Translations under genes and position numbers: made by a program
From: Euprymna scolopes
Taxonomy: Eukaryota
Length of the DNA stretch: 64,000 nt
Assembly (NCBI GenBank): GCA_053919585.1
Contig: CM132783.1
Strand: one strand, 5' to 3'
Part shown: positions 1,416 to 64,000 of the stretch, piece after piece
Numbering within the stretch: position 1 is the stretch's first letter
Layout of the letters: each line of letters opens with the position of its first letter
Notes under the pieces: generated by a model
Told to the model about the DNA's origin: nothing
The model's database searches: none
Seen by the model: the letters and a program-made list of their open reading frames with translations, nothing else

Positions 1416-1555
1416 TGTAATATCCCTAACCCCTCATCCCTTGAATGAACTCTTCCGTTAACTATAAAGGCTGCGTAATTAACGCTATTTGTGACTTGCT
1501 TTCTTTAGTGAATAAAACCTTTACAAAGGTATTCGGCTCTTCATTTTTCACTACA
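1416..1555 (+). repeat. 5' LTR of the Gypsy element
   Basis: Direct repeat of 5207-5346; TATAAA at 1463-1468, AATAAA at 1511. Confidence 0.96.
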
Positions 1556-1573
1556 ATTTTATTCACAAAAGAA

Positions 1574-4500
1574 ATAGACCAAGTACTTCGTCCCGAACGA
1601 TTCGACACCGAGTCTACAGCCTTCAATGCAGAAAAAAAGTACAAACACTGGAAACTCACGTTTATGAATTACTTACATACGGTTAACGGCACTGAAGAAA
1701 CTGGAAACACCCAAACTGACTTCTATGCTTTGATAAATAGCATATCGGCTGATGTATACGAAATAATCAGTGACACAAGCGACTATGCATCTGCCATGAG
1801 AGCTCTGGACGCGGCATACATCAGGCCTACTAATATCGTTTACAACCGACACCAACTTATTACCATGAAACAACAACCAGCGCAAACAGTGGATTCTTTC
1901 AGGCTACAGTTGGAAAACCTCGCTAAGACATGCAACTTCCAAGCCGTGAGTGCTGAAACAAATAAAAGCCAATATATGCGGGAGGCTTTTATTAGCGGTA
2001 TCTCCTCCTCCTCAATTCGGCAACAACTTCTCGAGAAATCCTCGCTAACTTTTCGGGAAGCATACGAGATGGCAAGATCTCTGGAACAAGCAGAAAAACA
2101 CTCTGCGTGTTACAACCAGGAGAGTGTGATTTCTGCGCCAATAATCGCTTCAGGAGAAAATACGAGTCTAGCTGCAACACAAAAAAAACGAGGCCAAAGG
2201 AAATTTGTTTTTCTGCAGGAATTCTTGTCATTCGCGTCGCCTTTGTCCAGCACGGGACTCGAACTGCAATAAGTGTTCAAAAAAAAAAGGACACTGGGCC
2301 AAAGTCTGCAAATCTTCCATGTCAGCGGTGTTAAATGAAGACACTGATTTCCCGAGTCTCGCATGTCTAGGAAGGAAAAAAGACATTACTTTTACTAAGT
2401 GTAAAATAAATAGATTCACTGTCCATGCCATGATAGATTCTGGTAGTGTGGGGACTTTCATTAACGACAATATTGCAAAAAAAATGAACCTCGAAATTAT
2501 TCCCAAACACAAAGAAATATCATTAGCCGACCCTAAAATGTGTGCGAAAATTGTGGGAGAAACTAAAGTCGATATCTCTCTAAATAATAATGTACACTCT
2601 AACATAATTGTGGAGGTCATTAAAAATTTATTTGTCGACTTAATCTTAGGAAAAGATATTCTCGGCAGATACAAGATGGTAACTTTCAAATTCGATGGAC
2701 TGGAGGAAGAACTTATTATCGGAGCAGTCACCAAGAATACCTTTTTTTCATCCATGAACGTTTCTCCTCCCCCATTATTTTCTCATCTCTCTACGAAAAC
2801 AACACCAATCAGCACTAAGTCACGTCGCCACACAATTGCTGATAGCAAATTTATAAGAGCAGAGACTGCAAAATTGTTGGAGGAAAACGTTATAGAACCC
2901 TCAATTTCACCTTGGCGAGCACAAGTTCTAGTACAAGTTCTAGTAACATTGAATGAAAACCGAAAAAAAAGAATGGTGATTGATTATAGCGACACAATCA
3001 ACAGATTTACTGAATTAGACGCTTATCCGATACCAAGTATATCAAAGATTGTCGAGGAAGTAGCCAGGTATAATGTTTTCACTACGCTTGATCTTAAATC
3101 AGCATACCATCAAATCCCCATCAGTAAAGAGGATCGTAAATTTACAGCATTCGAGGCGAATGGTAAATTATACCAGTTTACTCGCCTACCGTTCGGGGTT
3201 ACTAATGGAGTAAGTGCCTTCCAAAGGACCATTGACGGCATTGTCAGCAAAGAGCAATTAGTAGATACTTTTGTCTATGTGGATAATGTTACTATCTGTG
3301 GAAAAACCCAAAAAGAGCATGACTATAATCTTCAAAGATTTTATGAGGTTGCTAAACAGTACAACATCACGCTTAATAAAAAAAAAAGCATCGTTTCAGT
3401 CTCAACGATAACATTACTTGGGTACACTATCAAAAACAACCTGATATCACCCGACTAAGAACGTCTTAAACCTCTACTTGAGATGCCACCTCCTTTAAAT
3501 CTAAAATCACAAAGACGGATTATTGGGATGTTCTCCTACTACAGCAAATTTATCCAGAATTTTTCAGAGAAAATATTAGCACTAAACCGCAACAGAGAAT
3601 TCTCGTTATCTTCTGCGGCGTTGGACTCTTTTATAAGACTGAAAAACGACTTGAAAGATGCTATGCTGGTAACGGTTGATCCAGAAAAAGAATTTATAGT
3701 AGAAACAGATGCTAGTAACAACTGTATTGCAGTTACCCTTAATCAAGAGAATCGTCCGGTTGCATTCTATTCCAGAACACTAAGCCCTAGTGAAACGAAA
3801 CATCACGCGGTAGAAAAAGAAGCAGCTGCTATTGTTGAAGCACTACGTAAGTGGCGACATTTTCTCCTTGGTAAACACTTTACTGTAATTACGGACCAAA
3901 AAAGTATTAGCTTCATGTTTGATAATACCAGGAAATCAAAAATAAAAAATGACAAAATATGCCGTTGGCGCATTGAACTGTCACAATTTAAGTTTAGCAT
4001 CGTCTACCGTCCTGGTAGAGAAAATATTGTCGCTGATACGTTTTCCCGAATATCTGCTCTCACTTATTCCTTACAAGATCTTCGGGACCTACACTGTAAA
4101 TTATGCCATCCAGGCATTACCCGACTCTTCCATTTTTGCAAAGAAAGAAACTTTCCTTTCTCCCTCGATCAAATAAAAGGAGTAACTAATTCGTGCTCGT
4201 CTTGCCAGTATTTAAAACCCAAATTCTTCACCGGTAACGAGGGAACTCTCATAAAAACAATATTACCATTTCAGCAATTAAACATGGATTTCAAGGGCCT
4301 ACGTTCACACATGGTAACAAATACCTACTTACGATAATCGACGAATACTTGCGTTTTCCTTTTGCATTTCCATGTAAAGATATGACAAGCTCAACAATCA
4401 CACAATGCCTGAATCAACTATTTGCGATATTTGGTATGCCCGATATGATTCACACAGATAGAGCGAATGATTTTCTGTCGGAAGAAACGATCAATTACTT

Positions 4501-36309: not shown

Positions 36310-38656
36310 ACATTGATGGATACCAAATCTGTGACGGAACTATCCAACCTGATCCTGAGCTTTTGGAACCCCTTTTGCAAATGTCTCCTCCTTCGGATTC
36401 AAATTCATTAAAAAGATGCCTTGGTATGTTTTCTTACTATGCGAAATGGATACCTAAGTATTCACACAAAATTCGTCCCCTGGTTGAAAATAAACAATTT
36501 CCTATGCCGCCTATATTTATTACGAGGTTGTATGTTGAGGCAGCCTTTAAGAAATGTTCCAAGTTAGTGTCATGCTCCTCTTGAGTTTTACCGCAAATGG
36601 TAATATCATTAATGTAAGAAAAAGTTCCAAATAACTTATTTTCAGAAATAAAGGAATTCATAAATCATTGAAAGGCAGAAACCCCATTGGTGATACCCAT
36701 GGGTATTCGTTTGAATTGATACAAAAATATGTCGCTGAATCATCTGTAAAGGTTATCGACGATGAACTACCAATTACTATCGAAACCGATGCCTCAGAAA
36801 AGGCTATCGGAGGCACCCTCTTACAGGCTGATAGGCCTGTAGCGTTCTTTTCTCGCTTACTAAACCCATTGGAAATACGACTACACATAGTTGAAAAAGT
36901 GGCTTACGCGATAGTTGAATGTGTCCGAAAATGGAGGGACCTCCTTGCTGGGAAGCACTTCACTATCGTAACAGACAAACAGCCGTATCTTTTATGTATA
37001 AGCCATCTAACCGAGGAAAAATTAAAAACGATAAAATCATTCGGTGGAAAATGGAGCTTCTCCTGGCCTGGTCTCGTACGATATAAAACACTGTCTCAGA
37101 AGTGAAAACATTGTTGCCGATGCTTTATCGAGAGTGCATGGTGCTGCTGCTTCCTCCTTGGAGGAGCTAAGGGCCATACACAGTTCATTAATACACCCTG
37201 GTGTACAGCGTTTTTGGCACTTTATATGATCACAAAATATGCCATACTCAATTGATGAAGTTCAGCATGTGACATCTGAGTGTACAACGTGCGCAAAAAT
37301 AAAGCCCCAATTCTTCAGCCCTACTAACAATACACTGATCCGCGCTACTGCTCCCTTCCAGCGCCTCTCCGTAGACTTCAAGGGGCCTGTCCCGGCATCT
37401 TCGAAAGGATGTTATTACCTATTTACTATCGTGGAGGAGTACAGTCGATTTCCCTTTGTGTTCCCTTGCCGTGATTGTTCTTCTTCGCAGACCGCAATCA
37501 AGTGCCTGACAAATATTTTTTCTATTTTTGGACTCCCCGCTTTCATCCATTCTGATAGAGGAACATCGTTCGTGTTGGAGGAGTTCAGAAATTTCCTGTC
37601 GCAACTTGGGGTTGGGTGCAGTAACACTATTGCATACAACCCAAGAGGAAACAGTCAGTGCGAGCGCTATAACGGCGTTATTTGGCACTCAATATTATTG
37701 GCCCTGGAATCTAAACAGTTACCCCTTAGTGCTTGACAGGACATTCTGATGTTTTAAATTCTATTCACTCCTTACTATGCACTAGTACGAATGCAACTCC
37801 ACACGAACGATTGTTCAAATTTGAAAGGCGTTCTTCTACCGGTACTGCCTTACCTGTTTGGCTCTGCGAACCTGGGGAGGTACTATTGAAACAGTTTGGC
37901 AACTGGAGCAAGTACAACCCGATCGTCGAGGTAGTGGAACTCCTCGAGGCCAACTCTACACATGCGAGAATACGGCATAATTATGGCAGGGAGGATTCAG
38001 TAGCGCTAAGACATTTGGCTCGTTTTCCGCGCTCTGATGGACCTCAGGGTCCTGCTGAGAATACTCGACCCAACCTTGCAAATGCAGACCCGGCCCATTT
38101 GATTGAAACAAGTCCAATTGACAATACACCTAATGCAGAAAATATAGAGAATTCGCAGAGACCTGCCAGTCCTTTGAATATTGAACTGCTTCCACGCCGG
38201 TCTAGCCAAATCCATAAACCAGTCCAGCGACTGAACTTATAAATAAAACACATCACCACTTTTAAAGATAACTCTGTACTTTGAAAAAAAAAAATCTATA
38301 CCTTGCAATCTCTCTTACTAGTGTGGGGGGGGGGAGATTGCTATATTTCCGTTAAAGTAACAGTTTCTATAGCATGTGATTTTGCACACGTTCCTTTTCC
38401 CTTTTAAAAGGGCTGAGTTTTTTTCTTCTTCAACATTTCGTTACTAACTGTTCTTGGCCTTTTGGTGTCTAACTCTGTCCCGTGGGGAGGCATAGTAAAT
38501 AGGTACTAACAGCTCTTGCATTTACTTCTGCTACCTGCTCTTTACTATTTGCTCTTACTTTTACTATTTGCGCTTACGTTTATTATTGGCTGTGAAATTA
38601 GTTCGGTAAAGCCTAGTAAAGAGGTTTTGCTCTGTCTTCCGTTCTATGATAAAACA
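36310..38656 (+). mobile_element. Partial Gypsy element (same broad lineage as 1416-5346): RT remnant, RNase H, integrase, PPT and probable 3' LTR
   Basis: LGMFSYYAKW, ETDAS, HPGV..CTTC, VDFKGP, IHSDRG, GNSQCERYN; G-run PPT at 38325-38337; LTR candidate 38339-38656. Confidence 0.85.
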
Positions 38657-42800: not shown

Positions 42801-43016
42801 ACAGATACCATGACGCAAAAAACCTCTACTCCCACTACTCCCCCTAAGTACTTTTCAAACTTTAACGTCTCCTTTTCTTTCTTTTTTCAAACGTATCCAA
42901 TAGACGCTCTTTAGCGTTTTTTCACAACTGAAATTCAACTATAAAACCTCCTCACACGACCTCCCTCTCTATTTAATACCCCCCCCCAAATAACCTTCTA
43001 TCCATTTCTGTAAGTT
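39890..43016 (+). mobile_element. Penelope-like element (RT plus C-terminal GIY-YIG), frameshifted; probably Hydra-type clade; 3' end continues after the BEL insertion to about 50272
   Basis: KADK, FDIVSYYPSI, MGAFDSAE, GIYRDD, NFLDVTFNL, WFNPPY, CPL..NC..NVVYKA..YIG..FKERF..H..CHLCLYEK. Confidence 0.88.
42220..42605 (+). repeat. Imperfect tandem duplication (period about 190 bp) in the Penelope 3' region
   Basis: atccgc.tacctatctatattatccgaacc and caacgtctacaaaa each occur twice. Confidence 0.8.
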
Positions 43017-46000
43017 TATAAAAAAAAGTAGTTACCTCCCTTTGTTCAAACTAATTATATCGACCACTTCTCCTTTCTGAAAGCCCTATTTTGATTGGCT
43101 AGGATGAAGCTCCTTGGCCAATCAACAAACATTTAATATAAGCAGAATTCTGGAAAAACAGATTCGCGCTCTTTTTGAATCAATCGTCGGCCTATAGACA
43201 ACTATGGAAAATCTCTCCTAAATTTGCCGCCGAATTTTTATTGAACTTTTTCAGGGAACCGTCCAAGACTTTTGGACGATAAAGAACTTTTTATTGGACT
43301 TCTAAAGCCGCAAACACAATTAGTTTTGCAAGAACCTTTTCTTTGTAATATTTTCAATTTAATATACATAATTTTCTCCAATTCTTGTGCGAGTTCAGCA
43401 ATCTTTATTTCTGTATTTCCCACTTCCTACTTCAACAAGACACCAGCTCCCGGCAATCGCCATATTTTGCAAAACTAAATAACGTTTAGCAGCTTGTTGT
43501 GAAGAAAAAAAAAATAAAAGGGAAGAGAAGATTTGAACTCCTGAGGATATTTGCAAGGAAAATGGAAAAAGGAATACCAATTTGAGAAGTCCCTCTTAAA
43601 AAAAAAAAATTTATTTCGTTTCCAAAAAAAAAAAAAACGAATAAATAGTATTTCTGCCTTTGTTAAAGGTTTAAAATTCAATGAACATTTTAAAAGAAAA
43701 AAAAAAATTTATTTCGTTTCCCAAAAAAACAAAACGAACAAATAATATAATATTTCCTGTTGTATTATTAAAAGTTTGAAACTTTCTACCGACTGAAGTT
43801 CGCGTAAAGCAGGCATCATTCGTTCAAGAGCGTGGCGTCGTACATACGAATGTAAATAAACATGGCCTCCTTATATAAGGGCGATAACTCCACTTATGCA
43901 AACTACCGTCCAAGGGCCATAACTCCATTTATACTAAGTTCCGTCCAAGGGCCATAACTCTTCTCGGCCTATACACAGACATTATCAACAATACTCCCAC
44001 AAAATTTAACTTGTTTAAAAAAAAAAAACAACTTAAAACCATCATCCTTTCCCAAAACAAAACAACTGTAAAATGGATGATTTCCGGACCTTGAAGGGTG
44101 TTAGGGCGCTCATGGACTCCAGAAACGTGTTAAAGGAAGATATTTCCCTTAACACGGACATGTTGGAAGAACGCGAAGGTTTGAGAAAAAAAACCTTCCA
44201 GAAGGAAGAAGCTATAATTAAGGAGTTGCAGATTGAGGTCCGCTCCTTAAATGATAAAATTAAAGGGCTGTGTATAAAAGCAGAACTTGATTTAAGGGAG
44301 TGTGGATTTGTTGAGGAGCAAAGGAGGGAAATTGGCTTTCGAGCTAATATTAATGATCGCCTTGCCGACATTGAAAATTCTATTGAAAACCCCACTACAT
44401 CACGGAAAAATGAACCTACCTCTGTACCTTTGCTTTCTGTCCCCAAGTTGCAGTGTGCCACCTTTAGTGGAATCAATCCTTCCAAATTTGAATATAAAAA
44501 TTTTATTGCTCAATTCAAAAACTGTACTGAGTCTATTGATTCCGGTAGGGCAAAATTAGCCTTATTGAAAGGGTATTTGAGTGACTATGCCTTGCAATTG
44601 GTTTCCCATCTGACCTTGGAGGATGGTAATTACGATGTAGCGGTGGATTTGCTGACCAAGGAATTCCTGGATGTCCCCTTTATAATAAGTGAGATCTTCA
44701 AGCAGATCATTTCTACTTCTCCTCAATATGACCCTGAATTTGTGGCTGTGAAGCGATACCTTGCTGAGGTGAGAGCGGATTTATCCGAATTGAGGACTTC
44801 ATATCTGATAGATTTTTTTGAGGAGAACTCCCCCGGATTTTTGCTGGTCAGCCATATTATATACGAAAAGTTGCCAGTTGCCTTGAGAAGGGAAATTAAC
44901 CACAGAGTGGGCACGAGTTACCCGTCTCTAACACAAATTTTTGAAAATTACAATGAGGCAGTTCGTGCTCTGTCTCGAAATAAAAAACTTTTTCGGGTTA
45001 TGGAAAACCCCTCGAAGAATGATAAAGGGCAGGTCAAGACCTATGAAAAAAAGAATGGTGATGCTGCTCTACAGAATTTCACTACAAGCTCTTCTGGGGC
45101 ATATTGCAAACTTTGCACATCACGTGGCCACACTATGCTAAAATGTACCAAGTTTGCATCTTATGAAGCCAGAGTTGAGAGGTGCAAGCAACTGAAACTG
45201 TGTACAGGATGTTCCAGCTTAAAACATAAAAGTGAGAATTGTCCTGGACTCCAGAGCAAATCACCCCTCACGTGCAGCTTATGCCTTTCAAAGGCGCATA
45301 TTGCACCCCTGTGCAACACTAAGAGAGTGGTTTCTCTATTCTCTCACGTTTATGAAAACGAAATCATATTGCCTGTTGTAGCTATTTCTTTAAATTATGG
45401 ATCTGAGAAAGCTACTATTAACTGCCTATTGGACACAGGGAGTCAGCGTTCATATTTTTCTAAGAAAATATTAAAGGAGCTGAAGTATCCTGATGGAAAT
45501 TCTGATCCAACCGATTATCAAATGAAGACCTATGCGGGTGTGACTATGAAGCGATTTGAACAGGTTGTCTTGAACGTTACCATGGGAAAGAGGAAACAAC
45601 TCCCTATTCCTGTTTTAATCGATGATAGATTCAATATGCAGTTTGAGTTCGCCAGCTTTGGCCAAGTGAAGTCCAACCTGAATGAGTTAAAACACATATT
45701 GGTATTTTCAAATGAAAAACAGGATGATTCCATAACAATTCAGGGTATCCTGGGAGTTGACATATTTCAGTTCATGGAGGGTTCCAGAATCATTAAATGT
45801 ATGAATGGACAGGCCTGGGATTTGCCTCAAGGGATTGCCCCATTTGGTAATGTACAACACTTTTTGTATCCTCATCAAGTCAGTCCTGTGAGATGTGGAA
45901 TTTCCAAAACAATTGTCAATTATCATACTACAATATCCAAATATGCCCATTGCCCTGAACGACAGTTGAATTCCATATTGGAACCCAAGTCTTCCTACCC

Positions 46001-49000
46001 GGATCCGTTTCCAGATGTATTTGAGAATTCCAACGTGGAACGGAATTTGGAAAGAATGTTTGCTGTGGACTCAGCTGCTGCTTCCCATGACGAAGAACTA
46101 ATTGGTGATTATGACAGAAATAGGATTGAAAACTTCAGGAAGTCTATCGAATTCAGGGACAATTCTTATTTCGTGGATCTACCTTGGCATAAGGACAAAA
46201 TCGATTCCGTTCCCTCTAACTATCAAGTCGCTCTTAAAGTGCTTGACAGAACAATGCTTTCATTGGAGAAAAGGGACTTGGATAAGACCTATACTGATAT
46301 TTTTCTTCAGCAAGAGAGCGAAGGGATTATCGAGAGAATTGAAGTCGCCCCACAAGATTTCTGCAAATACATTTGGATACCCCATCGACCGGTCTTTAAG
46401 TCGGATCAACAGGTAACCACTAAAATCAGGCCTGTTTTTAACTGTTTGTTGAAGACCGGGGGTGGTTACTCCCTCAATGAAGCATCTTATCCAGGTGTGA
46501 ACATGATGAATAACATGCTTGAACTGTTGCTCTTATTTCTTACTAACAAATATGTATTATTGGGAGACATAAGAAAGGCATTTCTTATGATCAAACTCCG
46601 GTCGGTTGAGGACAAAAACAGATTTTGTTTTTTCGTAAAAGATGGAGACAATTTGCTTTGCTTCCGATATTGTACATTGATATTTGGCTTCAATGCCAGC
46701 CCATTCATTTTAAATTACGTTCTCAAACACCATGTCAGCCGTTTTCCGAATGATGCATGTACTGAGATGCTGAAAAATCGATTTTATGTCGACAATTTAT
46801 GTATGACCAGCAATTCTTCTGAGGAAATAATCAGTCTTTATAAGAGTGCCGTGCCTCGTCTGCAGACAGGAAATTTCCAGTTGAGATCGTGTAACTCCAA
46901 CTATGAGCCTCTTCGAGACATTATAACGGAGGATGACAGAATCGTACAGCATGGTTGCGAGTACGAAAAGGTCTTGGGATATAAATATCACCCTGAATTG
47001 GATACTATTAGCATTGTTAACACTATGGTTCAGAGGAACATACTCTCAAAAAGGGATATTTTGGCCCAGACAGCAAAAATATTTGACCCACTGTCACTAT
47101 GTGCCCCGGTTACAATTAGGGCAAAAATACTTCTCCGAAGATTGTGGTTGCTCAAGTTGGGTTGGGATGAAAAGGTTCCTACTGACATAATGACTACCTG
47201 GTCGAATTTGGCCGAGGACCTTTCTGGTCTAGGTGATCTATTTTTTACAAGACATGCTATAGACACTGGTAGCCAACTGAAATTATATTTGTTCTGTGAT
47301 GCGTCACCACAGGCATATGGATTTGTCATATATGGCGTGCAAAATGGGAAGTCTCACATAATATTTTCTAAGGTTAAAGTGGCCCCGATGAGAACAAAGA
47401 CATTACCTATGATGGAGTTGCTTGCAGTATATATTGCATTCAAGGCTTTAACTATGATACTGAGATCCTTCTCTGGTGTCAACATAGAGGACGTTTTTGT
47501 TTCTGTGGATGCGCAAGTTGTTTTGTCATGGTTGCTCACCGAGAATATAAAGGCAAAGAGTCTGTATACCAGAAACAGAATTAAAGATATTCGAGAAATG
47601 AAGGAGAAGTTGAGTGAGGAATTTGGGTTGGGCATTCATTACAAATATGTTCCTTCTGCCGACAACCCGGCTGACCTTCTTTCTCGTGGTATCACTCTGG
47701 AAAAGTTTAAACAGGGACTGGACTACTGGACATGCGGACCTGCGTGGCTTGTTGAGCAACCTGAGAAATGGCCTACGAGTACTTTGAGCTGTCTGAGCCC
47801 GGAAAATAAGTGTCATGTGGAAAGTGTTTTCCATAATACATTGAGTGAAGCTGTTAGGGAACCACTGATTCCATTTGACAGGTTCTCGGACTTCAACAAG
47901 TTGTGTCGATCAACTGCTTTCGTATTCAAGTTTGTGCATCGATGCAGAAAAGTGAAGGAACATTCAGATCCAAAACAGACAGCCACGAATTACCTGATAA
48001 AGATGATGCAATTGCAATCGTTTGAAAAGGAAATTGCTTATTTGAAGAATCCTCTTGACAGGGAAATCCCAGTGCTGGTGAAGAATCTTAACGTTTTCAT
48101 CGATTCTGATGGGATTTTGAGAGTGGATGGTAGAATTGCCAATTCGACAAGATATGACTACAATTTAATCTATCCAATATTGCTTGCAAAACATCACTCT
48201 CTTACAAAATTACTGATTATGGATAGCCATAATCGATGCAGGCATTTGGGTATTGGTACGACAGTGACCAAATTGCGTTATCCGGATACTGGGTCCCACA
48301 GGCAAGACAGTCTGTGAAGACTGTGATTTCTAACTGCAATACCTGTAGGAAATTCAACAGCCTAGCCTTCAAATACCCCAAATTGACAAATTTGCCAAAA
48401 CACCGTGTTAGATTAATCAATCCTTTCCAACACACAGGCATAGACTACACAGGTCACATCTGGGTACAAAGAGATGGGAAGTCTCATAAAATGTATTTAT
48501 TAATTTTCACATGTATGAACGTGAGGGCTGTTCACATTGAACTTGTACCTGATATGAGCACACAAGCCTTCATTCAAGCCTTGATTCGGTTTTCAAATAC
48601 CTATGGAGTTCCCAGTCACATATACAGTGACAATGCACGTTCCTTTAATGCAGCCTTAGGTGGTGATGTAATTAAACATCACATAAACAGTAATGAGTTC
48701 TGTAACTCATATTCAAGCGCTGGCATTAAACACATAAAAATACCCTTATACTCCCCTTGGGTTGGAAGTACTTGGGAAAGAATGATCAGAGTGATAAAGT
48801 CATGCCTATTCAAAACACTTGGCCGATCTAAAATCAGTTATTTTAACCTTCTAACCCTTCTATCAGACATCAAAAGAGCCGTGAACTCTCGACCTCTGAC
48901 CTACAGATGCTCTACCGATATTGATCTGCTTCCCTTAACACCCAACTGCTTCACTCATCCAAATATAAACTGTAAGCTCTCCTTCCAATCTGACACACCC

Positions 49001-50146
49001 AGTTTGGTTGAGACAGAACCAATAACTAGGTCTCTCCTTGTGAGTACCTTGGAAAGCAGAGAGGAATTAATATCTAAATTCAAAGAGATGTGGCACGATG
49101 AGTATTTGCTAAGTCTGAGGGATTTACACGAAATCGAATTTCACAATAAATAAATATCAACGACGTAATACTCGTCAAGAATCCGGCCAAGTCCAGGCCC
49201 TTCTGGAAGCTGGGCAGAGTTATTGAGCTATTTAGTGGCAACGATGGCAAGGTTCGTTCTGCTTGAATAAAAAGAGGTGATGGTGCAGTGGAAACACATA
49301 GCCTCAAACATTTATATCCATTGGAGTTATCACTCACTCATAACCACTTTCCTGACACCCCAGCAGATGAGGAATCTGATGAATTTGCATCCCACCCTAT
49401 AGAAGAATGTAGGGACCCATCGGAACCTTCAGAAGAAATGGCCAATTACAGGCCTAAAAGGATCAAGAAATCCACATCTAATCCTGAATACATTTATTAT
49501 TAAAAAAAAAAAAATTTTCCATTGTAAATGGGCCATAATAATGCCCAACACATTAAGCTGTTAAATATTTCTATTAAACAGAATATTCTGTACAATTTAA
49601 TTTAAACACTTTACGTAGCAATCACAAATATTGTAACTGATTGCCTTTATATAGCATGCAACGATTTCAATCGTCGCATTATTTGTTGTTGTTGGGAGAG
49701 TATAAAAAAAAGTAGTTACCTCCCTTTGTTCAAACTAATTATATCGACCACTTCTCCTTTCTGAAAGCCCTATTTTGATTGGCTAGGATGAAGCTCCTTG
49801 GCCAATCAACAAACATTTAATATAAGCAGAATTCTGGAAAAACAGATTCGCGCTCTTTTTGAATCAATCGTCGGCCTATAGACAACTATGGAAAATCTCT
49901 CCTAAATTTGCCGCCGAATTTTGATTGAACTTTTTCAGGGAGCCGTCCAAGACTTTTGGACGATAAAGAACTTTTTATTGGACTTCTAAAGCCGCAAACA
50001 CAATTAGTTTTGCAAGAACCTTTTCTTTGTAATATTTTCAATTTAATATACATAATTTTCTCCAATTCTTGTGTGAGTTCAGCAATCTTTATTTCTGTAT
50101 TTCCCACTTCCTACTTCAACAAGACACCAGCTCCCGGCAATCGCCA
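43017..50146 (+). mobile_element. Full-length, young BEL/Pao LTR retrotransposon
   Basis: 446-bp LTRs at 43017-43462 and 49701-50146 (3 differences seen); TSD TAAGTT; PPT gggagag at 49694-49700. Confidence 0.96.
44073..49503 (+). pseudogene. BEL/Pao gag-pol polyprotein (1414-aa ORF, frameshift near 48290, further disruption near 49150)
   Basis: Gag with three Cys/His knuckles; protease LLDTGSQRSY; RT TTKIRPVFNC, DIRKAFL, FYVDN; RNase H FCDAS/ELLA/DNPAD; integrase GIDYTG, YSDNA, WERMI; C-terminal HLYPLE. Confidence 0.93.
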
Positions 50147-50169
50147 TAAGTTTAAACTTCAGTCCACCT

Positions 50170-60613: not shown

Positions 60614-61855
60614 TGTCGTGGGGCAAGAAAAACTATGTTCCCTTTCCCCCCACTCCACTGTTTCATACAACAAAACAGACATGCGACATTCCAGCATGAG
60701 TGAAAGAGAAAGAAGAAGAGAAGAGAGGACGAATAAATCCGCTTAACAACAAACCAAAAGTGAGGCAAGTTGACCTACTTATGTCCCTCTTCTCCAGCAT
60801 TTCTGTTTCATTTGTTTTGCTAAACTACTTGGCGTCAAACACATTAAGACTACAGCATATCATCCTTGTGCCAATGGCCTCATGGAAAGATTCCACCGGA
60901 CACTGAAGGCTTCTCTGACCACGAGACACCCCACCAACAACTGGGTGGACGGGCTACCTTTGATTCTTTTGTTAATCCGAAACTCACTGAAAGAGGACCT
61001 AGGTTGTTCCCCAGCAGAAGTAGTCTTTGGCACAGCACTTTCTCTACCTGGCCAATACTTCCAGGACATCATGCCCAACCTTACTCCGGCAAGTCCCTTC
61101 ACTCAAGAGCTACGCCATAAAATGTCCCAACTCCAGTACTCACAACCCAAGCAACCACCATCACCGATCGTCTACATCCCTCACCAGCTCCAGGACTGTA
61201 AATATATCTCCATACAAAATGATGCAGTAAAGAGACCACTGACACCAACATACCAGGGTCCATTTAAAGTCTTGCAGCATGCTGAGAAACATCTGAGCAT
61301 CAACTGAGAAAATCGAACCGACACCATTTCCATCAACAGGGCTAAACCAGCTTTCCTGGAAAAGACATCACAAGGGACGGAACACATCTTAACTCACCCA
61401 GCCCGCAAGAGACAGACCAAACTCCAGAAGTGTCCAGCCCTCCAACCAGACACACTAGACATGGAAGAAAGGTTACCTTCTCAAGTAGATATAAGACATA
61501 CATCTACTACTAGTGGATTATACCCAAGTATCCAGGGAGAGGGCCTTTGCTGCAAACCATCATATATATACATCCCCTTACTAAGACAGTATGCCACATT
61601 TTTTTTTTTTTTAATTGAGTATGATCAATTATCCAGGGAGAGGGCCTTGTCGTGGGGCAAGAAAAACTGTTTCCTTTTTCCCCACTCCACTGTTTCATAC
61701 AACAAAACAAGACATGCGACATTCCAGCATGAGTGAGAGAGAAAGAAGAGAAGAGAGGACGAATAAATCCGCTTAACAACAAACTGTAAGCGAGGCAAGT
61801 TGACCTACTTATGTCCCTCTTCTCCAGCATTCCTGTTTTATTTGTTTTGCTAAAC
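60614..61855 (+). mobile_element. Internally deleted Gypsy element (CsRn1-like integrase remnant between two LTR segments)
   Basis: About 210-bp direct repeats at 60614-60825 and 61648-61855; TTAYHPCANGLMERFHRTLK..SPAEVVFG..YQGPFKVL; PPT agggagaggg. Confidence 0.85.
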
Positions 61856-62036: not shown

Positions 62037-64000
62037 TGTTGCCATGAAGAAAGCGCTTCTTGGCCAAAAATTTAAATCCGGCTAGGGGGCTAAGAGTCCC
62101 CCGAATTGAGAGATCCAAACACTGCCGAAGGATCTCATGCAGCAGCAGCAATAGTTCCAGCAGCAGTAATTCAAAGAGCCCTTTTCAGGGCTAGCTTCCT
62201 ACGAAAGACCTTCCCCTTTGCTTTACTGCCTGTCAGCTATTGCAACTTCCAGCTTCTACAGCCTCAACTTCCTGCATCTCCTGCCTGCAGCCTTCAGCTT
62301 CCTGCATCTCCTGTGCACAGCCTCAGCTTCCTGCGACTCCTGCCTGCAATACCCAGCCTTCTTCCGATGCAGCTCGGTTCTGCTTTGCAGTCTGCTGCCT
62401 CCCTGTTCCAGTCCCGGACGTCATTCCTAGACCGCTCCAGTGTCTAGGCCCCCGGTTCCTGTCCGATCCAGACCAGGTCAAGACTCTAGACCATCCTAAC
62501 GTCTAGTCTCTAGTTCCTGATGTCCAGCCAATCAATCCAGACTAGGAAGAGGACTCTAGACCACCCTAACATCTAGGTTCTCGTTCCTGATTCCTGATCC
62601 AGACTACCCGTACGGCCAGCTGACTACTCCAACGTCCAGCAGACCAGTTCCTGAGAACAACTCTCATTCAGACCATATTTATTTTCTGACAAATAAAAAG
62701 GTGATCTTTCGTCCTTTAAACGAACATTCTGTGTCTGTCATTCTTCTTTGCCTATTCACTATTTTTCTGCCTGCGTCTGCCTTCATAAAGTTGTTGAATC
62801 GATTGTCTCTGGATGAACGGCCCCACAACAAGTGGTGACCCCAACGTGATCTCCAACATGGGCTGGCAGAAGGCACTGAAGAATCCGAAATCAACTCATC
62901 AGCTCCTTTCATCCAACTACCACCAGGAGTTGGTTCATTCAACTTGAGGCGATATTTGCATCCAGGAGAGTCACACGCCAGGACACTAAATATGCCTCGC
63001 TAGTACAGGCTCTACCTTCAACCGTCATGGAAGAAGTGGAGGACATCCTAATGAACACACCCGAACGTCTCCCATACACCCACCTCAAAGATGCCATCCT
63101 CAAGCGGACAGGCTGCTCAGATGAAGATCTCATCAGAGACCTATTTTCTCACGTGTCTCTGGGTGACAGAACTCCATCCAGCTCTGGCGGCTTATGAAGA
63201 GTCGCCTCGGAAACAACACCATGGCCGAGCCTATCCTCCAAGACCTGTGGATGGATCGGTTTCTCTGAAACATTACACAAGTCCTGGCCCTCGTACCAAT
63301 AGAAACTCCCTGGAAGTGGTGACCGATTCGGCAAACAAGGTTTATTCCCGGGGTCATGAAAGAGTCCACCAAGTGGACAACACCCACGAAAGCGTCCACC
63401 AAGTGGAAAAGACCCACTGAAGAGACCACCAAGGTGACAACAACCCACAAAATCTTGCACAGCGTTTTGAAGAGGAGATGGCTCAGATGAGAGCCAAATT
63501 CCACGACCTGATACTCGCCTTACTCCAGAGGCGACGAAGCGCAGACGCCAATACTCGTGGTCGAAGCCCAGCACCACACAGACATTATAGAAGCCGTACC
63601 CGCAGTTCAAGTCAGGGACGGGGGCTATAACCCTAAAGAATGCTGGTACCATCAACGATTCAGGGACCAAGCCTGCAAGTGTCAACCTCCCTGCACGCAC
63701 CAAAGGACACAGGGAAATGAATAAGCCAGCAGGCAGCGGCAATGACCCCTGCTGGTACACACATGCATAGCCGTCTTTTTTATGTGTGGGACAATAATGG
63801 CCTAAGATTCTTAGGTGACACTGGTGCAGCCATCAGCGTTATACCACCCACCAACAAGTCAACCTTAAGACCCGCCCCATTTCAACTTTGGGCAGCAAAC
63901 GGTTCCATTATAGAAACCTATGGGAACAAAGAATTAACACTAAACATTAACCTCAGGTGTGACCTCAAGTGGTCGTTCACCGTGGCAAATGTCAAGACCC
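62037..64000 (+). mobile_element. 5' part of a CsRn1/Kabuki-like Gypsy element: LTR, tRNA-Trp PBS, frameshifted gag, protease
   Basis: LTR TGTTG..CAACA at 62037-62830 with internal 29-30-bp tandem repeats; gag WFIQLEAIF..TKY..LP; protease FLGDTGAAISVIP. Confidence 0.88.
62833..62850 (+). promoter_or_regulatory. Primer-binding site complementary to the 3' end of tRNA-Trp
   Basis: TGGTGACCCCAACGTGAT, 2 nt after the LTR; matches the recalled TGGTGACCCCGACGTGAT at 17 of 18 positions. Confidence 0.85.

What the first reader, a model, noticed from the sequence alone, without database searches (positions are those of the whole stretch)
43320..43478. BEL/Pao element also lacks a tRNA PBS and has a self-complementary PBS
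Seen: after the 5' LTR comes ta-TTTTGCAAAACTAA (43465-43478), with no TGG. It can pair with TTAGTTTTGCAAGA inside the LTR (43320-43333): 12 bp Watson-Crick, 14 with one G-U. The LTR segment starts with an initiator-like TTAGT. The LTRs are about 99% identical, so PBS decay is an unlikely explanation. Known: BEL/Pao elements are generally described as tRNA-primed. Inference: self-priming may have arisen independently in a second LTR superfamily. The Gypsy at 62833 with a normal tRNA-Trp PBS is an internal control.
Basis: partly seen in the sequence, partly recalled or inferred. Interest (0 to 1): 0.8.

Follow-up and report, generated by a model that had tools for sequence, protein, structure and literature searches.

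The report
BEL/Pao retrotransposon with self-complementary primer site
A young jumping gene of the BEL/Pao type has no docking site for a host tRNA; the sequence in that position pairs perfectly with 12 bases of its own terminal repeat, and so do its relatives' sites, which suggests it starts copying itself with its own RNA, as some yeast elements do.

Summary
The BEL/Pao element has 448-bp LTRs at 43017-43464 and 49701-50148, with 3 mismatches. Its 5' LTR is followed by TT and then TTGCAAAACTAA (43467-43478). That 12-mer is the perfect complement of TTAGTTTTGCAA inside the LTR (43320-43331). There is no TGG for 99 nt. Shuffling gives P of about 0.001.

The 2-nt spacer matches the tRNA-Trp-primed Gypsy control in the same window. 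It also matches the 2 nt between the polypurine tract and the LTR start.

Five other families of the same RT clade, from marine metagenomes (39-52% aa identity), show 11-16-nt perfect complements starting 2 nt after the LTR end. Every sequence is different, and each has P of 0.0003-0.01. Distant BEL/Pao relatives carry ordinary TGG tRNA sites and no LTR complement. One relative (L065) does not fit: its complement starts 9 nt after the LTR end.

Tf1-like self-priming is the best reading (about 0.65). A CCAAT/TATA-like promoter suggests a start near 43165 instead, which would put the primer inside R.

I found no paper describing self-priming in BEL/Pao. It is already predicted in copia as well as gypsy, so this would be the third superfamily, not the second.

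The scan has noted the same thing on other DNA of this genome (s1-244822, s1-288422).

The parts
43013..43016 (.). Target-site duplication AGTT, 5' copy
   Evidence: the same 4 nt follow the 3' LTR at 50149-50152.
43017..43464 (+). 5' LTR, 448 bp, termini TAT..ATA
   Evidence: 99.3% identical to 49701-50148.
43094..43142 (+). ATTGG (43094-98), CCAAT (43118-22) and TATA-like TAATATAAG (43134-42). This is a candidate Pol II promoter that would put the start site near 43165.
   Evidence: Read directly. Function is inferred only.
43320..43331 (+). LTR-internal segment TTAGTTTTGCAA, the candidate self-primer. Pairing extends to 43333 with one G-U.
   Evidence: Unchanged in all 29 copies compared. 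The surrounding block 43294-43339 also occurs in other RNA-library contigs.
43362..43367 (+). AATATA, a variant poly(A)-signal-like hexamer between the primer segment and the LTR end
   Evidence: Inferred only.
43465..43466 (+). 2-nt spacer TT between the LTR end and the PBS-position sequence
   Evidence: The control Gypsy has the same spacing (ACA|AG|TGG..), and so do the relatives.
43467..43478 (+). PBS-position sequence TTGCAAAACTAA, the perfect complement of 43320-43331
   Evidence: Two of the 29 copies carry a single substitution here.
44073..48317 (+). gag-pol open frame of 1414 aa (DUF1759 weak match, Peptidase_A17/Pao)
48236..49153 (+). Integrase frame (Integrase_H2C2 and rve, weak matches) in a different frame. 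The pol frame of this copy is interrupted within 48236-48317.
   Evidence: Other copies have open frames of up to 1610 aa.
49694..49700 (+). Short polypurine tract GGGAGAG abutting the 3' LTR
   Evidence: GGGAG-type tracts sit at the same place in relatives.
49701..50148 (+). 3' LTR
50149..50152 (.). Target-site duplication AGTT, 3' copy

Best explanation
The element is a young, multicopy BEL/Pao LTR retrotransposon. Its minus-strand primer-binding site (43467-43478) is complementary not to a host tRNA but to 12 nt of its own LTR transcript (43320-43331).

Proposed mechanism, by analogy with Tf1:
1. The R/U5 part of the genomic RNA folds back so that 43320-31 pairs with the PBS.
2. The element's RNase H cuts just 3' of the paired segment.
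3. The freed 3'-OH is extended across TT, U5 and R. This gives a minus-strand strong-stop DNA of about 135 nt, which jumps to the 3' R.
4. Plus-strand strong-stop DNA later copies the RNA primer. This rewrites the PBS from the LTR sequence in every cycle, which would explain why primer and PBS stay complementary while drifting between families.

Shown here: the complementarity, its exact position, the absence of a tRNA site, and recurrence in relatives. Inferred: the fold-back, the cleavage, and which RNA end serves as primer.
For: (1) A 12-nt perfect complement starts 2 nt after the LTR end, with P of about 0.001.

(2) The spacing is canonical. The tRNA-Trp-primed Gypsy in the same window has ACA|AG|TGG.., and distant tRNA-primed BEL elements have the LTR end, 3 nt, then TGGTGCC... 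No other primer has room next to U5.

(3) It meets the published in-silico criterion for self-priming: a complement of at least 10 nt starting 0-5 nt after the 5' LTR (PMC6317226).

(4) Five further families of the same RT clade show perfect complements starting 2 nt after the LTR end: L062 (15 nt), L067 (16), L095 (15), L066 (12) and L074 (11). All sequences are unrelated to each other, and P = 0.0003-0.01 each. The clade is separated from the others by a branch with SH-aLRT 100. For the four circular assemblies, a PPT-adjacent terminal inverted repeat supports the LTR ends. L073 (14 nt) and L061 (12 nt) look the same.

(5) A test that ignores LTR ends finds the longest inverted repeat in ten non-coding regions to exceed shuffles, with combined P = 4e-5.

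(6) The tRNA-primed controls L079 and L084 have no LTR complement of 6 nt or more.

(7) If the RNA starts at 43320, the MFE and centroid folds close R-U5 with this 14-bp duplex, z = -3.5.

(8) The genome holds no tRNA-like hairpin with this arm: 0 exact matches, and 37 one-mismatch matches against 86 for the reversed-pattern control.
Against: - The transcription start is unknown. The RNA data were assembled contigs that cannot show RNA ends and may contain DNA.
- A CCAAT/TATA-like promoter about 180 nt upstream suggests a start near 43165. With that longer RNA, the duplex is not in the predicted fold (z = -0.5).
- LTR ends in four relatives were inferred with the complement already known, so that check is partly circular.
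- In L062 the LTR end is ambiguous over about 10 nt and there is no target-site duplication.
- In L065A and L065B the complement starts 9 nt after an LTR end that a target-site duplication supports. Simple priming does not allow this.
- Five relatives could not be resolved.
- All genomic copies of this family are near-identical, so the family itself shows no covariation.
- No biochemical evidence exists for any BEL/Pao element.
Confidence: 0.65

Rival explanations
1. The LTR-leader complementarity is a long-range RNA helix with another role, such as packaging, dimerisation, translation control or presentation of the PBS (like retroviral U5-leader stems). The true primer is then something else, still unidentified.
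For: In L065A and L065B the helix sits 9 nt away from the LTR end and extends through a bulge. Retroviruses do have U5-leader stems (general knowledge). The duplex is not in the predicted fold of the longer RNA.
Against: In the window element and five relatives the complement starts exactly 2 nt after the LTR, leaving no room for any other PBS. A structural helix has no reason to keep that register. No TGG or GC-rich tRNA-like site lies anywhere near the LTR end.
Confidence: 0.15
2. A host RNA other than a tRNA 3' end primes synthesis, for example a 5' tRNA half cut in the anticodon loop, as in copia. The joined arms would look like a tRNA-Cys-type anticodon arm.
For: Half-tRNA priming exists in Ty1/copia lineages (PMC6317226). 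The two arms together form the palindrome TTAGTTTTGCAAAACTAA, which has the shape of a 5-bp stem with a TTGCAAA loop.
Against: The genome has no exact copy of that hairpin and no excess of one-mismatch copies (37 against 86 for the control). ARAGORN finds no tRNA in the window. This idea would not explain why the LTR itself carries the same 12-mer. It would also not explain why each related family has a different PBS that matches its own LTR.
Confidence: 0.07
3. The match is a chance event in an AT-rich, partly palindromic sequence (TTGCAA core), picked out because many elements were inspected.
For: The scan looks at thousands of LTR elements, so a 1-in-1000 event will turn up. The sequence is 75% A+T and contains a 6-nt palindrome.
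Against: Dinucleotide-preserving shuffles already allow for composition. The same design recurs in at least five independent families at the same offset. It is absent from the tRNA-primed controls.
Confidence: 0.03

Closest known systems
Tf1/Tf2 (S. pombe), Tj1 (S. japonicus) and the Tf1/sushi group of Ty3/gypsy chromoviruses; the Tcn1 clade in plants
   Same: There is no tRNA PBS. A PBS of about 11 nt just downstream of the 5' LTR is complementary to a segment of the element's own LTR transcript. Fold-back and RNase H cleavage were shown for Tf1 and are proposed for Tj1 (PMC4600332). The window element meets the same in-silico criterion (PMC6317226).
   Different: This is a different superfamily: BEL/Pao, with a Peptidase_A17 protease and no chromodomain. 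In Tf1 the primer is the first 11 nt of the mRNA. Here it is unknown whether 43320 is the RNA 5' end, and an upstream CCAAT/TATA-like promoter suggests it may be internal to R. The loop between primer and PBS is 135 nt here. No biochemistry exists.
TAR lineage of Ty1/copia (Houba, Osr-1), predicted to be self-priming
   Same: Self-priming is inferred purely from LTR/PBS complementarity in a superfamily otherwise primed by tRNA (PMC6317226).
   Different: These are plant copia elements, unrelated in sequence. Their existence means BEL/Pao would be the third superfamily with this trait, not the second.
Canonical BEL/Pao elements (Belpaoviridae, Semotivirus)
   Same: The window element shares the gag-pol organisation, the Pao peptidase, integrase with DUF5641 in relatives, LTRs and a 4-5-bp target-site duplication.
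   Different: The ICTV profile describes an 18-nt PBS complementary to host tRNA-Arg or tRNA-Gly, and replication primed by a host tRNA (PMC8742986). The distant relatives L079 and L084 have TGGTGCC.. sites. The window element and its clade have none.
Half-tRNA priming of copia, Osser and Bianca elements
   Same: The PBS does not begin with TGG.
   Different: Those PBSs match the anticodon region of tRNA-Met or tRNA-Ile. Here no tRNA-like source was found, and the match is to the element's own LTR.

Membership tests
BEL/Pao LTR retrotransposon (Belpaoviridae) | Pao-type aspartic peptidase (Pfam Peptidase_A17) within pol | tested here: met
   PF05380, E = 7e-35, 120.8 bits against a cut-off of 22.3.
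BEL/Pao LTR retrotransposon (Belpaoviridae) | gag (DUF1759) upstream and integrase downstream of RT/RNase H; nearest relatives are BEL/Pao polyproteins | tested here: met
   DUF1759 scores 24.4 bits, just under its cut-off, and rve and Integrase_H2C2 are weak matches; 327 homologues, all carrying PF05380 plus DUF5641 or Integrase_H2C2.
BEL/Pao LTR retrotransposon (Belpaoviridae) | LTR pair with a 4-6-bp target-site duplication and a polypurine tract | tested here: met
   448-bp LTRs, target-site duplication AGTT, and GGGAGAG before the 3' LTR.
BEL/Pao LTR retrotransposon (Belpaoviridae) | [quoted passage not shown] | tested here: not met
   no TGG within 99 nt of the LTR end and no GC-rich TGG site in the leader. 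This feature is descriptive rather than definitional, so membership stands on the proteins.
Tf1-type self-priming (a mechanism, not a phylogenetic family) | No tRNA PBS, and a sequence of at least 10 nt starting 0-5 nt after the 5' LTR that is complementary to the LTR | tested here: met
   12 nt at offset 2, P of about 0.001.
Tf1-type self-priming (a mechanism, not a phylogenetic family) | The complementary LTR segment is the 5' end of the genomic mRNA (the start of R) | tested here: inconclusive
   only assembled contigs were available, and they do not show RNA ends; the region around -30 is only T-rich, and an upstream CCAAT/TATA-like promoter suggests a start near 43165.
Tf1-type self-priming (a mechanism, not a phylogenetic family) | RNase H cleavage of the primer-PBS duplex and extension from the cut end | not testable with these tools
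   This needs cDNA or particle biochemistry.
Tf1-type self-priming (a mechanism, not a phylogenetic family) | Primer and PBS co-vary among related elements | tested here: met
   five to seven related families have unrelated sequences but perfect 11-16-nt complements at the same offset. L065A against L065B shows partial covariation. Caveat: some LTR ends were inferred, and L065 is offset by 9 nt.
Tf1/sushi chromoviruses (Ty3/gypsy) | Phylogenetic membership (gypsy-type RT and protease, chromodomain integrase) | tested here: not met
   Pao peptidase and BEL/Pao homologues only. The resemblance is in mechanism, not ancestry.

The most novel reading that the evidence does not exclude
Self-priming is the ancestral and general priming mode of a large BEL/Pao clade spread through marine invertebrates. 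The self-primer is copied into the PBS at every replication cycle, so the pair drifts freely between families. This would be a third, independent origin of tRNA-free priming among LTR retroelements, or a retained ancestral state. In this family the primer may be an internal R segment released by RNase H rather than the mRNA 5' end.
Probability: 0.45. Interest if true: 0.72.

Novelty: new variant of a known kind. Interest (0 to 1): 0.6.

Why it matters
Reference descriptions (the ICTV profile) present BEL/Pao elements as tRNA-primed, and their replication has barely been studied.

If a whole clade primes itself, three things follow:
- PBS-based annotation tools that look for tRNA complements will systematically miss or misjudge these elements.
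- tRNA-fragment-based host defence against LTR elements would not touch them.
- Self-priming would be shown to evolve repeatedly, or to be ancient, across all three LTR superfamilies.

The family is abundant (more than 250 near-identical copies in a 5.9-Gb genome), so the prediction can be tested directly with 5'-end RNA data.

Tried and rejected
- **Sister families in the same genome.** I did not try to get round this.
- **Transcription start.** All RNA runs were Logan contigs. Contigs stop at the LTR end or run into flanks, so no start or end of an RNA could be read, and DNA carry-over cannot be excluded.
- **IMG/VR scan.** It found no relatives.
- **tRNA complementarity.** There are no tRNA genes in the window. 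No tRNA-like hairpin with the joined arms exists in the genome.
- **Folding from the alternative start.** The fold of 43165-43560 gave no support for the duplex.
- **L063 and L097.** Their 13-nt repeats are at non-homologous places, and one lies upstream of the polypurine tract, so they were not counted.
- **L064, L071, L069, L070 and L096.** They are unresolved because the contigs lack a complete LTR or a convincing end.
- **TATA-like and poly(A)-like motifs near the arms.** They are present in some relatives but are too common in AT-rich DNA to count as evidence.
- **Literature.** Searches for self-priming in BEL/Pao found nothing. The main BEL/Pao survey and the Sinbad paper do not discuss PBSs at all.

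Full report
**What is there.**
The window holds a complete BEL/Pao LTR retrotransposon. Its two LTRs are 43017-43464 and 49701-50148. They are 448 bp long and differ at three positions, 43239, 43258 and 43390. The target-site duplication is AGTT (or AAGTT, which would shift the LTR end by 1 nt), the LTR termini are TAT..ATA, and a short polypurine tract GGGAGAG abuts the 3' LTR.

The long open frame 44073-48317 carries the Pao peptidase (PF05380, E = 7e-35) and a weak DUF1759 gag match. The integrase lies in a second frame, 48236-49153. The pol frame of this copy is interrupted within 48236-48317. Other copies have open frames of up to 1610 aa.

The genome is 5.9 Gb and holds at least 254 candidate copies. 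The 40 that were scored are 95-100% identical over the LTR-leader junction. Forty-six chromosome-sized pieces and RNA holders labelled mollusc or invertebrate metagenome suggest a cephalopod. This is inference only.

**The observation.**
After ..GCCATA, the LTR end, come TT and then TTGCAAAACTAA (43467-78). This is the exact reverse complement of TTAGTTTTGCAA at 43320-31, which lies 145 nt before the LTR end. With one G-U the pairing reaches 14 bp and abuts the LTR. No TGG occurs for 99 nt.

Dinucleotide-preserving shuffles give P = 0.0007-0.0013 for a complement of 12 nt or more starting within 5-6 nt of the LTR end.

**Geometry.**
Minus-strand synthesis must start next to U5, so the primer has to anneal within a few nucleotides of the LTR end. 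The Gypsy control in the same window reads ACA|AG|TGGTGACCCCAACGTGA, a tRNA-Trp-type PBS after a 2-nt spacer. Two distant BEL-like elements from metagenomes read LTR end, 3 nt, then TGGTGCC...

The window element has the same 2-nt spacer (TT) before its 12-mer. It also has a 2-nt interval between the GGGAG core of the polypurine tract and the LTR start. So 43467-78 sits exactly where a PBS belongs, and nothing else fits there. It meets the published in-silico criterion for self-priming: a complement of at least 10 nt starting 0-5 nt downstream of the 5' LTR (PMC6317226).

**Relatives.**
All genomic copies of this family are too similar to show covariation. The LTR motif is unchanged in all 29 copies compared, and the post-LTR motif is unchanged in 27 of them. 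Sister families in the genome could not be fetched. I therefore took homologous polyproteins (39-52% identity over RT-RNase H) and their contigs from marine metagenomes.

An RT tree splits them by a branch with SH-aLRT 100. One side is a 19-member clade containing the window element. The other side is a distant group that includes the tRNA-primed L079.

| Element | How the LTR end was set | Complement | Start after LTR end | P |
|---|---|---|---|---|
| Window | LTR pair | 12 nt | 2 nt | 0.0013 |
| L062 | LTR pair; end ambiguous over about 10 nt; no target-site duplication | 15 nt | 2 nt, with the end I set | 0.0003 |
| L067 | PPT plus terminal inverted repeat | 16 nt | 2 nt | 0.0003 |
| L095 | PPT plus terminal inverted repeat | 15 nt | 2 nt | 0.0003 |
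| L066 | PPT plus terminal inverted repeat | 12 nt | 2 nt | 0.0033 |
| L074 | PPT plus terminal inverted repeat | 11 nt | 2 nt | 0.0103 |

- All the complementary sequences are unrelated to each other.
- L067, L095, L066 and L074 are circular assemblies. A terminal inverted repeat lying directly after a GGGAG-type polypurine tract supports their LTR ends.
- L073 (14 nt, after ..ACATA|A) and L061 (12 nt) look the same.
- The arms of L073 and L074 differ by one base on each side, which keeps the pairing perfect, although their LTRs do not otherwise align.
- A test that ignores LTR ends (the longest inverted repeat in each non-coding region against shuffles) gives combined P = 4e-5 over ten elements.
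- The tRNA-primed controls L079 and L084 have no LTR complement of 6 nt or more at that place.
- No member of the clade has a GC-rich TGG site next to an LTR end.

**Exceptions and limits.**
- In L065A a target-site duplication (ATAG) fixes the LTR end, and the 11-nt complement starts 9 nt further on. Its diverged neighbour L065B has 13 nt, gained through changes on both sides. Simple priming cannot leave such a spacer out of the 3' LTR. That lineage either works differently or the helix has another role there.
- L063, L097, L069, L070, L096, L064 and L071 could not be resolved.
- For the circular assemblies, the LTR end was sought with the complement already known, so that check is partly circular.

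**Where the RNA starts.**
I could not test this. Every RNA run holding the family is stored as assembled contigs. These contigs break at the LTR end or run into flanks, and they may contain DNA. They show only two things. The family is present in poly(A) libraries of two studies. The 46-nt block 43294-43339 around the primer segment also occurs in other, otherwise different contigs.

If the RNA starts at 43320, the predicted fold closes R-U5 with the 14-bp duplex (z = -3.5). The LTR also carries ATTGG, CCAAT and TAATATAAG at 43094-43142, a classical promoter layout that would start RNA near 43165. From that start, the duplex is not in the predicted fold.

A start upstream of the segment does not refute self-priming. 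RNase H cleavage 3' of 43331 would still free a primer end, and the strong-stop DNA would still share 43332 to the poly(A) site with the 3' R. It would, however, differ from Tf1, whose primer is the first 11 nt of the mRNA (PMC4600332). Several relatives have a TATA-like motif about 30 nt before their segment (L061, L095 and L067). Such motifs are common in AT-rich DNA.

**Other primers.**
ARAGORN finds no tRNA in the window. Joined, the two arms would form a tRNA-Cys-like anticodon arm, so I searched the genome for that 18-mer. There were no exact matches. One-mismatch matches numbered 37, against 86 for the reversed-pattern control. A half-tRNA primer would also not explain why each family's PBS matches its own LTR.

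**Known and new.**
Self-priming was demonstrated for Tf1 and is proposed for Tj1 and the Tf1/sushi group. It is predicted for the plant Tcn1 clade and for the TAR lineage of Ty1/copia. The ICTV profile describes Belpaoviridae as primed by host tRNA-Arg or tRNA-Gly. The BEL/Pao survey and the Sinbad paper do not treat PBSs. My searches found no report of self-priming in this superfamily.

So this is a new variant of a known kind. It would be the third superfamily with the trait, not the second.

Earlier notes of this scan reached the same idea on other pieces of this genome (s1-244822, s1-288422 and s1-279927). I used them only as leads. The comparison above was made independently.

**Verdict.**
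Self-priming is the best-supported mechanism (about 0.65). The exact primer end and the start site remain open.

Noticed in passing
window 1499-1575: A second element has CTTTCTTTAGTGAATAAAA and, about 40 nt downstream, TTTTATTCACAAAAGAAA. These are complementary at 17 of 18 positions. It is the Gypsy self-priming candidate noted as s1-280699. I did not determine its LTR boundaries.
   Followed up: no
window 62820-62850: The Gypsy element's LTR end ACA is followed by AG and TGGTGACCCCAACGTGA, a tRNA-Trp-type PBS. It was used here as the internal control for spacing.
   Followed up: partly
window 43294-43339: This 46-nt block around the candidate primer also occurs in contigs of three RNA-library runs that otherwise do not match this LTR. 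It may be a core shared with sister LTR families.
   Followed up: partly
window 37239-37682: A weak integrase-like match (25% identity, E = 3e-7) to the BEL integrase frame. It is probably a fragment of another retroelement.
   Followed up: no
window 60713-60825 and 61743-61855: A 113-nt direct repeat, 95% identical, 1030 nt apart, upstream of the Gypsy PBS.
   Followed up: no
L096:672-720: A related BEL/Pao element from a marine metagenome has a near-perfect 29-nt hairpin palindrome at about its LTR end. It is followed by ATTATCATCA, which is complementary to positions 36-45 of the same LTR. The contig lacks a complete 3' LTR.
   Followed up: partly
L079:267-290 and L084:1971-1995: Distant BEL/Pao-like elements (26-30% identity) carry TGGTGCCGTGACC.. 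and TGGTGCCGAGACC.. 3 nt after their LTRs. The canonical tRNA-primed design therefore coexists in marine metagenomes with the LTR-complementary design.
   Followed up: partly
window 43597-43640: A-rich tracts in the leader vary in length between RNA-library contigs (insertions or deletions of 1-3 A).
   Followed up: no
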